A DNA stretch of 43,487 bases from Octopus bimaculoides (lineage: Eukaryota). The notes beneath the pieces are model-generated. The model was not told the origin of the DNA. It saw nothing but the letters and a program-made list of their open reading frames with translations, and did no database searches. The stretch is from the NCBI RefSeq assembly GCF_001194135.2, contig NC_068985.1, positions 5,257,872 to 5,301,358 on the forward strand, given 5' to 3'. Of this stretch, positions 10,291 to 11,944 are shown one piece after another (the stretch's first letter is position 1; every line of letters begins with the position of its first letter). Made by a program: the position numbers and the translations under genes.

Positions 10291-10851
10291 GTTTAGAGAA
10301 TTTCTTAACAGAACAATAAACATCGATCTATGACAAACACCCGACGAAGTACTTTAGCAACTTGTTTCATTAATCATTGTAGATTACAAATATGTAGCAT
10401 TCATATATACACACATAACAAAAGGAGCAACTTCCTTAAAGACAGTATAGAATAAAGATGGAAAAATTCCTTCCCGAACTTGCATATTTCAAGACAAAAA
10501 AAAAAGTCTGCTTCGGAGTCCAAGGCCAGAATATGTTGTTCAATTTTCTACTTGAGGATAACGCTTCGGAGTCTTCAAGGCGATGTCAATGCTATTTTAT
10601 GATATAGGAAAATATCAAACATGTATCTTCTGTTATTTGCAAACTAAAAAAGATGGGGGACTGAAATTTTCCCGGAAATGTCTGTTTCATATTTTTGACT
10701 AACAGTGAAATGTTGGTGTGTAGAATATTACCTTGAACCTTAGTTAATCTTGATAATTTGTAGAGCTGCAGACCACTCGTAGAATCTCGACACCCTCCAG
10801 GTATTTATTTCTGTCAAAAGTATTAGCAAAACACCAAACACAAATTTCTTA

Positions 10852-11222
10852 GAAAATTACTATTTGTAAATCTCACAACGAGAGATATTCAGGAACAATA
10901 CTTTGGAGTAAAGATTGTTTGCCAACATAACATGGCAATCCTGGTTTAGGACTAATGTTGCTGTAATTTAGCCCCAGGAGACATTGTCTCCAGCTGACTA
11001 TACGATACGATCTGTGTCATTATACTTTCGAACAAGGGAAATCGCGATACATAGATATTGTTTTGAGCTGAGTGGGGGTGCTAAATTCCCTTGTTCGGAA
11101 GTATAAGGACACAGATCGTGTCGTATAGCCAGATGGAGACAAAGTCTCCTGGGACTAACTTACAGCAACATTCTTCCTAAACCAGGACTGCCATTTTATG
11201 TTGGCAAACAATCTTTTCTCCA
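10852..11222. mobile_element. Long-hairpin element, copy 1 (52-nt left tail + 139-bp inverted arms + ~41-nt loop)
   Basis: Arms 10904-11042 and 11084-11222 have about 14 mismatches in 139 (TGGAGTAAAG...CTTTTCTCCA); flanked by caaatttctta (10841-10851) / cagatttctta (11223-11233); second copy at 42.3 kb. Confidence 0.9.
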
Positions 11223-11944
11223 CAGATTTCTTATTCCAAACCTTATTCAACAAGCTTAATTTCTTCTATCTTTGTCGCAATTTCGACAAGTTTTTGACGA
11301 ATTAAATGAACGTGATAAACAATCTCTCAGGAATGTTTGGAAAAAGCTGTCATGTCAGAAATTGCGTAGATCATATCATTTCAGTCTGAGAACTAGATGA
11401 AGGGATTTCAGGAGAAACCATTTTCAGAAGTCTGCTCTGATTTCCTGTATATTCTATTACTATAAGGTGATTCGCGAAAGAAGCTTTAAGAAAACACACA
11501 CTCACACACGTGCACATGTGTATCTATGTATCTCTATGTGCGCGCTTGTGTGTAAGCTATCATAAAATATTAAATAGCAAAGCTAAATATCTAACAAGTA
11601 AAACATTATAAATATAACAAAATGCGCACAAATTGATAAGAAAAAAAGGATGTGAAAATAAAGCTAAAATATGACGAAGATCGATAACATGAAAGTTATG
11701 GTGTATCTTTAGGGTATATAACTCGAGCATTGCACGTCCAATATCAATTACTTATGCACAAGTGCAATCTTGTTAACCAAATTAGTTGGAGAAGCCATGG
11801 AAAATGCTTCTCATTTTAGTATTTCCAATAATGAATACTAGAGTAATGACAGAATAATAATTTCGAAATAGTCTAGAGCTACACAGGCAGTTCTTACTGG
11901 TGACGTAGAAGTATATGTAGTAGTATTAGTATAAGTAATATTAG

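What the first reader, a model, noticed from the sequence alone, without database searches (positions are those of the whole stretch)
10841..11233. Hairpin element with a one-sided tail and TSD: not an ordinary MITE
Seen: 139-bp arms at about 90% identity with TGGAG...CTCCA ends. The two copies (10.9, 42.3 kb) also share 19/22 nt of sequence outside the left arm only (gagatattca..aaca.tactt). Both stop exactly at CTCCA on the right, followed by a 10-11 bp near-perfect direct repeat whose left partner lies 52 nt (copy 1) or 25 nt (copy 2) before the arm. A DNA-transposon MITE should have its TSD flush with both TIRs. Established: Penelope insertions have an inverted pLTR lacking the short 3' tail, plus variable TSDs. 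Inference: a non-coding hairpin family mobilised by a PLE-type mechanism, and a strong dsRNA former (ADAR/Dicer substrate) if transcribed.
Basis: partly seen in the sequence, partly recalled or inferred. Interest (0 to 1): 0.8.

Follow-up and report, generated by a model that had tools for sequence, protein, structure and literature searches.

The report
Hairpin repeat with retroelement-style insertion ends
Two copies of a short hairpin-forming repeat in an animal genome have lopsided ends and duplicated target sites, which fits a Penelope-like retroelement insertion better than a cut-and-paste MITE; this pattern is already known for Penelope-like elements and is easily mislabelled as a MITE.

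Summary
Copy 1 (10852-11222) and copy 2 (42254-42482) are long inverted repeats with 137-nt and 97-nt arms, about 90% matched. Both end flush at CTCCA(A) on the right. On the left only, both carry an extra tail of 52 nt (copy 1) or 25 nt (copy 2), and the two tails share 19 of 22 nt. Both copies are flanked by direct repeats: 10 of 11 nt for copy 1 and 9 of 9 nt for copy 2.

New evidence: copy 2 lies inside a SINE that has five other copies in the window. Removing the insert plus one repeat copy restores the SINE end. So the 9-bp target-site duplication is real and the tail belongs to the insertion.

The lopsided ends, the different left boundaries, the different turn-around points and the 9 versus 11 bp duplications all argue against a cut-and-paste MITE. 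They match the published signature of endonuclease-bearing Penelope-like elements (PLEs): head-to-head 5'-truncated copies, a tail at one end only, and 8-10 bp duplications.

The PLE link is not shown directly. No reverse transcriptase or GIY-YIG reading frame is linked to the repeat. No hammerhead ribozyme was found. Only two copies exist, and the host genome was not in any searchable collection.

Verdict: probably a new member of a known kind (confidence about 0.5), of modest interest.

The parts
10841..10851 (.). Copy 1, left copy of the target-site duplication (CAAATTTCTTA)
   Evidence: D1. 10 of 11 nt match 11223-11233. Null P = 0.0013.
10852..10881 (-). Copy 1, outer 30 nt of the left tail, absent from copy 2
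   Evidence: No match anywhere else in the window.
10882..10903 (-). Copy 1, inner 22 nt of the tail, shared with copy 2 (19 of 22)
10904..11040 (-). Copy 1, left arm. Read as the repeat unit in inverted orientation, with its 3' end pointing outward.
   Evidence: 90.5% identity to the right arm.
11041..11085 (.). Copy 1, 45-nt loop at the head-to-head junction
11086..11222 (+). Copy 1, right arm, ending at CTCCA flush with the duplication. The last CA overlaps a CA in the target, a 2-nt microhomology.
11223..11233 (.). Copy 1, right copy of the target-site duplication (CAGATTTCTTA)
42245..42253 (.). Copy 2, left copy of the 9-bp target-site duplication (CAAGCTTTC)
42254..42278 (-). Copy 2, 25-nt left tail: 3 nt (AAG) with no counterpart in copy 1, then 22 nt shared with copy 1
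   Evidence: Shown to be part of the insertion by the SINE empty site.
42279..42374 (-). Copy 2, left arm
   Evidence: I12.
42375..42385 (.). Copy 2, 11-nt turn-around. Its sequence continues the right arm and matches arm sequence of copy 1, so the junction lies about 55-60 nt nearer the outer end of the unit than in copy 1.
42386..42482 (+). Copy 2, right arm, ending at CTCCAA flush with the duplication
42483..42491 (.). Copy 2, right copy of the 9-bp target-site duplication
42162..42237 (.). (CA)38 microsatellite, the tail of the SINE that copy 2 landed in. It ends 7 nt before the duplicated site.
42492..42640 (-). Body of the target SINE. This family has five other copies in the window, and they supply the empty-site comparison. 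The right-hand end of this part is approximate.

Best explanation
Each locus is a retro-type insertion made by target-primed reverse transcription. It most likely has the architecture typical of endonuclease-bearing Penelope-like elements (PLEs): two 5'-truncated copies of the same 3'-terminal segment, joined head to head.

The outer end of each arm is the 3' end of the unit (...CTCCA(A)). One of the two ends runs on into a short tail taken from the template. The central junction is wherever the two truncated copies met, which is why it lies about 190 nt from the outer end in copy 1 and about 105 nt in copy 2. Staggered nicks 9-11 bp apart give the target-site duplication.

**Shown:** the insertion boundaries, the asymmetry, the duplication, the different junction points and the different tail lengths.

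**Inferred:** the RNA intermediate; priming from both nicked strands, or snap-back self-priming; and that the enzyme is a PLE reverse transcriptase with a GIY-YIG endonuclease supplied from elsewhere in the genome.

If the locus is transcribed, the product would be a near-perfect 100-140 bp double-stranded RNA.
For: 1. **Real insertion.** Removing 42254-42491 restores the end of a SINE family seen five more times in the window. The duplicated 9-mer occurs once in each of those other copies.
2. **The tail is inside the insertion and on one side only.** The two tails share 19 of 22 nt, so the tail comes from the element and not from the target.
3. **Left boundaries differ (52 versus 25 nt) while the right boundary is fixed.** The sequences just inside the left duplications are unrelated, so no transposase-type end is conserved.
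4. **Duplication length varies:** 9 versus 11 bp.
5. **The turn-around point differs.** The loop of copy 2 is arm sequence in copy 1, as expected if each arm was truncated independently.
6. **Literature match.** PLE insertions are heavily 5'-truncated. They often carry an adjacent inverted 5'-truncated copy and a 30-40 bp tail at one end only. They have 8-10 bp duplications and a bias towards microsatellites. Authors state that the tail and the inverted structures are not seen in LINE-type insertion (PMC8557442; PMC3846280; PMC8969392).
7. **Microsatellite proximity.** Copy 2 lies 7 nt from a (CA)38 tract.
8. **Microhomology.** Copy 1 shows a 2-nt (CA) overlap between the element end and the target (D1).
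Against: - No reverse transcriptase or GIY-YIG reading frame lies in or next to either copy. None was found among the ten best open reading frames of the window.
- No hammerhead ribozyme was found, even at E <= 10. [quoted passage not shown] Naiad and Chlamys PLEs also lack it, so they remain possible.
- The tail lengths of 25 and 52 nt fall on either side of the published 30-40 bp rather than inside it.
- There are only two copies.
- The four arms form a star-like tree: 18 sites unique to one arm, one site specific to a copy and one site specific to an arm side. This cannot separate fresh head-to-head formation from copying of a ready-made hairpin.
- A central deletion in a palindrome could also produce the shorter copy 2.
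Confidence: 0.5

Rival explanations
1. It is a non-autonomous DNA transposon with long terminal inverted repeats, of the MULE / Foldback (Phantom) or Merlin type. It moves as a unit by cut-and-paste and makes 9-11 bp duplications. The left tail would then be an odd, asymmetric end.
For: The long arms (about 100-140 bp) and the 9-11 bp duplications are typical of MULE-type MITEs (own knowledge). The star-like arm divergence fits a burst from a master copy with near-perfect arms. MITEs are far more common in animal genomes than PLE hairpins (own knowledge). Mutator elements and MITEs are annotated in octopus (PMC13282606), although the host of this window is unknown.
Against: The duplication is not flush with the left arm. 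The 25-nt tail is proven to be inside the insertion for copy 2. The two copies start at different, unrelated sequences on the left, so no conserved left end exists for a transposase to recognise. The duplication lengths differ.
Confidence: 0.2
2. It is a 5'-truncated copy of a LINE-dependent retroposon, either a SINE or a LINE 3' end. The last 200-330 nt of that element would happen to be a palindrome. The tail would simply be upstream element sequence cut at different points by ordinary 5' truncation.
For: The variable 5' end, the fixed 3' end, the variable duplication length and the microhomology at the 3' junction are all classic for LINE-type target-primed reverse transcription (own knowledge).
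Against: The repeat has no poly(A) or simple-repeat 3' tail. The SINE and the LINE fragments in the same window have microsatellites next to their 3' ends; for the LINE this was only partly checked. The different central junction of copy 2 needs a separate deletion. No longer copy extends further to the left in this window.
Confidence: 0.15
3. The flanking repeats and the asymmetry arose by chance or by later rearrangement, for example local duplication or palindrome formation during DNA-break repair. The repeat would then not be a mobile element.
For: There are only two copies. Taken alone, the copy 1 duplication has P of about 0.001.
Against: The two copies lie at unrelated loci and share arms, ends and tail. 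The copy 2 insertion is precisely bounded by other copies of the SINE it landed in. The joint chance probability of the two repeats is about 1e-5.
Confidence: 0.05

Closest known systems
Insertions of endonuclease-bearing Penelope-like elements with an inverted pLTR and a one-sided tail (e.g. Pen2a_Av of Adineta vaga; Penelope of Drosophila virilis; Naiad)
   Same: Head-to-head inverted copies of the element's terminal segment. A short extension at one end only. Duplications of 8-10 bp. Heavy 5' truncation. Insertion beside a microsatellite for one copy. (PMC3846280; PMC8557442.)
   Different: No reading frame, and no direct pLTR pair framing an internal region: only two short arms. No hammerhead motif, so the resemblance would be to Naiad/Chlamys rather than to Penelope proper. 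The tails are 25 and 52 nt rather than 30-40 nt. No link to a parent element was shown.
MULE-type and Foldback-type MITEs (Mutator superfamily)
   Same: Long inverted arms, a small size, no coding capacity, and duplications of about 9 bp.
   Different: The duplication is not flush with the left arm. The left end varies between copies. The duplication length varies. The arms contain no tandem sub-repeats of the kind seen in Foldback elements.
Twin-priming inversions of L1 (Ostertag and Kazazian 2001; own knowledge)
   Same: The geometry, in which both nicked target strands prime on RNA and a duplication results, would explain a head-to-head junction at a variable point.
   Different: Twin priming inverts a more 5' part of the same RNA. 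It does not produce two copies of the same 3' segment, and L1 insertions end in poly(A).
Non-autonomous PLE derivatives (MRC1 and other non-autonomous Chlamys elements; animal non-LTR retrozymes)
   Same: Short non-coding sequences derived from PLE termini and moved by enzymes supplied from elsewhere in the genome (PMC8557442; bioRxiv 10.64898/2026.07.22.740005).
   Different: Those are head-to-tail tandems, and the retrozymes carry hammerhead ribozymes. This repeat is a head-to-head hairpin without a ribozyme.

Membership tests
Penelope-like element (endonuclease-bearing) insertion | PLE-type reverse transcriptase plus a GIY-YIG endonuclease reading frame, either in the element or in a longer copy that shares its terminus | tested here: not met
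   No reading frame longer than 40 aa lies in either copy. The ten best open reading frames of the window have no Pfam hit. Longer copies could not be searched, because the host genome is absent from all collections.
Penelope-like element (endonuclease-bearing) insertion | Terminal repeats formed by truncated copies, including an inverted 5'-truncated copy joined head to head | tested here: met
   Both arms share the same outer terminus. The junction point differs between the copies.
Penelope-like element (endonuclease-bearing) insertion | A short (about 30-40 bp) tail at only one end of the insertion | tested here: met
   The tail is 52 nt and 25 nt, on the left side only, with 19 of 22 nt shared. 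For copy 2 it lies inside the duplication. The lengths fall either side of the published range.
Penelope-like element (endonuclease-bearing) insertion | Short target-site duplications of variable length | tested here: met
   9 bp, confirmed by the empty site, and 11 bp with one mismatch.
Penelope-like element (endonuclease-bearing) insertion | Hammerhead ribozyme in the pLTR (canonical clades; absent from Naiad and Chlamys) | tested here: not met
   Rfam found none at the gathering threshold across the window, and none at E <= 10 across 10700-11400. No CUGANGA core is visible in the arms by eye.
Penelope-like element (endonuclease-bearing) insertion | Insertion bias towards microsatellites | tested here: inconclusive
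   Copy 2 lies 7 nt from (CA)38. Copy 1 is not beside a microsatellite. About 20% of the window is simple repeat or N.
MULE / Foldback-type MITE | Long terminal inverted repeats | tested here: met
   Arms of 137 and 97 nt at about 90% identity.
MULE / Foldback-type MITE | Target-site duplication directly flanking both inverted-repeat ends | tested here: not met
   The duplication is flush on the right only. On the left it lies 25 or 52 nt away from the arm, and the intervening DNA is part of the insertion.
MULE / Foldback-type MITE | The same terminal sequence at a given end in all copies | tested here: not met
   The left termini are GAAAATTACT... in copy 1 and AAGGAGATAT... in copy 2.
LINE-dependent SINE / retroposon | A 3' poly(A) or simple-repeat tail, or a 3' end shared with a partner LINE | tested here: not met
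   The repeat ends in CTCCA(A) with no repeat tail. The SINE and the LINE fragments in the window have microsatellites next to their 3' ends; for the LINE this was only partly checked.
LINE-dependent SINE / retroposon | Variable 5' truncation with a fixed 3' end and variable duplications | tested here: met
Helitron / Helentron derivative | No target-site duplication; insertion between defined target bases, with a hairpin near the 3' end | tested here: not met
   Duplications of 9-11 bp are present.

The most novel reading that the evidence does not exclude
The hairpin itself is the transposing unit. On this reading it is a self-contained, non-coding 'retro-MITE' family whose folded RNA is copied as a whole and moved by a PLE or other reverse transcriptase supplied from elsewhere in the genome. 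It would have imprecise 5' ends, and would seed the genome with ready-made long double-stranded-RNA loci. That would be a class of hairpin retroposon distinct from both MITEs and ordinary truncated PLE insertions.
Probability: 0.15. Interest if true: 0.6.

Novelty: new member of a known kind. Interest (0 to 1): 0.35.

Why it matters
Compact hairpin repeats are routinely filed as class II MITEs. If some of them are by-products of Penelope-like retrotransposition, MITE counts and DNA-transposon activity estimates in PLE-rich invertebrate genomes are inflated.

In that case PLE activity would also be a direct source of long perfect inverted repeats. Such repeats are potential substrates for double-stranded-RNA pathways (siRNA production, ADAR editing) and can be fragile sites in DNA.

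The head-to-head structure, the one-sided tail and the variable junction seen here are small, clean examples of the still unexplained PLE integration mechanism. For a transposon specialist this is a recognisable pattern, not a surprise.

Tried and rejected
**Collecting more copies.**
- Exact-pattern scans with conserved arm motifs found nothing in viral contigs, in metagenome contigs (two patterns) or in genome contigs.
- I searched the protein collection with a profile of the longest stop-free arm translation, hoping for spurious gene calls on other copies. It returned nothing.

**Finding the host genome.**
- A search with a LINE reverse transcriptase fragment gave at best 68% identity.
- The best hit's contig (L001, an ENA eukaryotic contig) holds neither the hairpin nor any DNA match to the window outside the LINE region and simple repeats.
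- Ten window open reading frames are not in the collection by exact look-up.
- A SINE-core pattern hit only two bacterial MAG contigs, by chance.

**Other checks.**
- Hammerhead ribozyme or any other RNA family: none. The only hit was a weak, structure-only match to the plant family MIR1435, far below its gathering score, which I rejected.
- Deciding unit copying against fresh formation from arm-specific substitutions: uninformative, with one site each way.
- Bias towards G:U pairs as a sign of selection on the RNA stem: none.
- Pfam on the ten best open reading frames: nothing.
- Matches of the copy 1 tail extension or loop elsewhere in the window: none.
- An assembly artefact is rejected, because the two loci differ, the arms have diverged by 10%, and both carry duplications.

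Full report
**Setting.** The window is AT-rich (about 35% G+C), gap-ridden eukaryotic DNA that looks like an invertebrate animal genome. It is packed with microsatellites, holds a U6 snRNA match, LINE fragments and at least one SINE family in six copies. The species could not be determined. None of the searchable collections contains this genome.

**Observation.** All the stated features are real.
- Copy 1 has arms at 10904-11040 and 11086-11222 (137 nt, 90.5% identity) around a 45-nt loop.
- Copy 2 has arms at 42279-42374 and 42386-42482 (about 97 nt, about 89-90% identity) around an 11-nt loop.
- The arms end TGGAG...CTCCA.
- Only the left arm is preceded by a shared sequence, 19 of 22 nt identical.
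- Both copies end exactly at CTCCA(A) on the right. A direct repeat follows at once, and its partner lies 52 nt (copy 1) or 25 nt (copy 2) upstream of the left arm.
- Against a null with the same geometry and simple repeats masked, repeats this good occur with P = 0.0013 (copy 1) and P = 0.007 (copy 2).
- No further copies or fragments exist in the window.

**New evidence: an empty site.** The right flank of copy 2 belongs to a SINE family that also occurs at 26452-26615, 40648-40807, 22358-22498, 41383-41526 and 1582-1735. In all five, the SINE end next to its microsatellite tail reads ...GGC-TTCTTTCAGTTTCYGTCTACC..., with that stretch present once. At copy 2, the left flank ((CA)38 ATTATTAG CAAGCTTTC) and the right flank (CAAGCTTTC CGTTTTCGTCTACT...) each carry the matching 9-mer. 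Joining them with a single 9-mer restores the SINE. Three things follow:
- The duplication is a true 9-bp target-site duplication.
- The inserted DNA is exactly 42254-42482 (229 bp).
- The 25-nt tail is part of the insertion, not of the target.

**What the anatomy implies.**
- The insert has no inverted repeat at its true ends. The left termini of the two copies are unrelated (GAAAATTAC... and AAGGAGATA...), while the right terminus is the same.
- The duplications differ in length, 9 versus 11 bp. For copy 1 it is 13 bp if the 2-nt CA overlap with the element end is counted.
- The centre also differs. The 11-nt loop of copy 2 is ordinary arm sequence in copy 1. So the turn-around lies about 105 nt from the outer end in copy 2 and about 190 nt in copy 1.
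- A fixed end, a variable opposite boundary, a variable stagger and microhomology are marks of target-primed reverse transcription. They are not marks of a DDE transposase, which needs defined termini.

**Comparison with the literature.**
- Insertions of endonuclease-bearing Penelope-like elements are heavily 5'-truncated. They often carry an inverted 5'-truncated copy joined head to head. They often have a 30-40 bp tail at only one end (PMC8557442).
- In Adineta vaga, a complete example has a 31-bp tail on one of the inverted pLTRs and a 9-bp duplication. Other insertions there have 8- and 10-bp duplications (PMC3846280).
- The authors say these tails and inverted structures are not seen with LINEs. 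They suggest self-priming as the cause.
- PLEs also prefer microsatellites, and copy 2 lies 7 nt from (CA)38.
- A hairpin made of two short arms plus a one-sided tail is therefore what a strongly truncated PLE insertion should look like.

**What is missing.**
- No reverse transcriptase or GIY-YIG reading frame lies in the element, nearby, or among the ten best open reading frames of the window.
- No hammerhead ribozyme was found. This excludes a canonical Penelope, Neptune or Nematis pLTR but not Naiad or Chlamys-like elements.
- With two copies, I cannot tell whether each hairpin formed afresh or a ready-made hairpin is copied. The four arms differ by 18 sites unique to one arm, one site specific to a copy and one site specific to an arm side. 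That is a star tree compatible with both readings.
- A central deletion in a palindrome could also give copy 2.

**RNA potential.**
- Folded as RNA, the inserts reach -215.8 kcal/mol (z -25) and -159.8 kcal/mol (z -22). If transcribed they would form long double-stranded RNA.
- The stem mismatches show no bias towards G:U pairs.
- Whether the loci are transcribed is not known, so ADAR or Dicer processing remains speculation.

**Verdict.** The positive claim of a PLE-type mechanism is the best available explanation, at about 0.5. The rivals are a MULE/Foldback-like MITE with an aberrant end (0.2), a LINE-type retroposon with a palindromic 3' region (0.15), and chance or rearrangement (0.05). 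If it is PLE-derived, it is a new member of a known kind showing a textbook PLE insertion signature. Its main practical interest is as a warning for MITE annotation and as a possible source of double-stranded RNA.

Noticed in passing
window 26452-26615, 40648-40807, 22358-22498, 41383-41526(-), 1582-1735(-), 42487-42559: A SINE family of about 160 nt with a core of GAACCCGGAACCATGTGGTT. In most copies one end abuts a (CA)n, (TA)n or (GT)n microsatellite, as if the microsatellite were its 3' tail. It served here as the empty-site reference for copy 2.
   Followed up: partly
window 1778-1884 (-): A full-length match to U6 spliceosomal RNA (67 bits, E 5e-15), directly flanked by (TA)n and (TG)n microsatellites at 1882-1997. 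It could be a gene or a retroposed copy.
   Followed up: no
window 5050-8700: Two adjacent fragments of a LINE (reverse transcriptase C-terminal region, best database identity 68%), interrupted by an N gap. (AAT)n/(TAA)n tracts lie at 6776-6805, 7071-7124 and 7507-7572, possibly the 3' tails of this LINE family.
   Followed up: partly
window 42083-42158: A small separate inverted repeat with arms of about 23 nt (ATAGAATAGTGGCACAAGGCACC ... GGCACCTTGTACCACTATTCTAC) lies immediately upstream of the (CA)38 tract beside copy 2. It is not present next to the other SINE copies.
   Followed up: no
window 10971-10994 and 11132-11155; 42346-42369 and 42391-42414: Each arm contains its own local palindrome (CCAGGAGACATTGTCTCCAGCTGG). 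In copy 2 the head-to-head junction lies about 5-10 nt from it. This recalls the palindromes reported at inverted PLE junctions (PMC3846280).
   Followed up: partly
window 13832-13954 / 14544-14666 and 22606-22767 / 23909-24070: Pairs of about 75%-similar segments in opposite orientation, 0.6-1.1 kb apart. They look like copies of a second interspersed repeat family inserted in opposite directions, not like compact hairpin elements.
   Followed up: no
window, whole: About 20% of the window is N gaps or simple repeats. Several apparent long palindromes (e.g. 25975-26450) are artefacts of N runs flanked by complementary microsatellites.
   Followed up: yes
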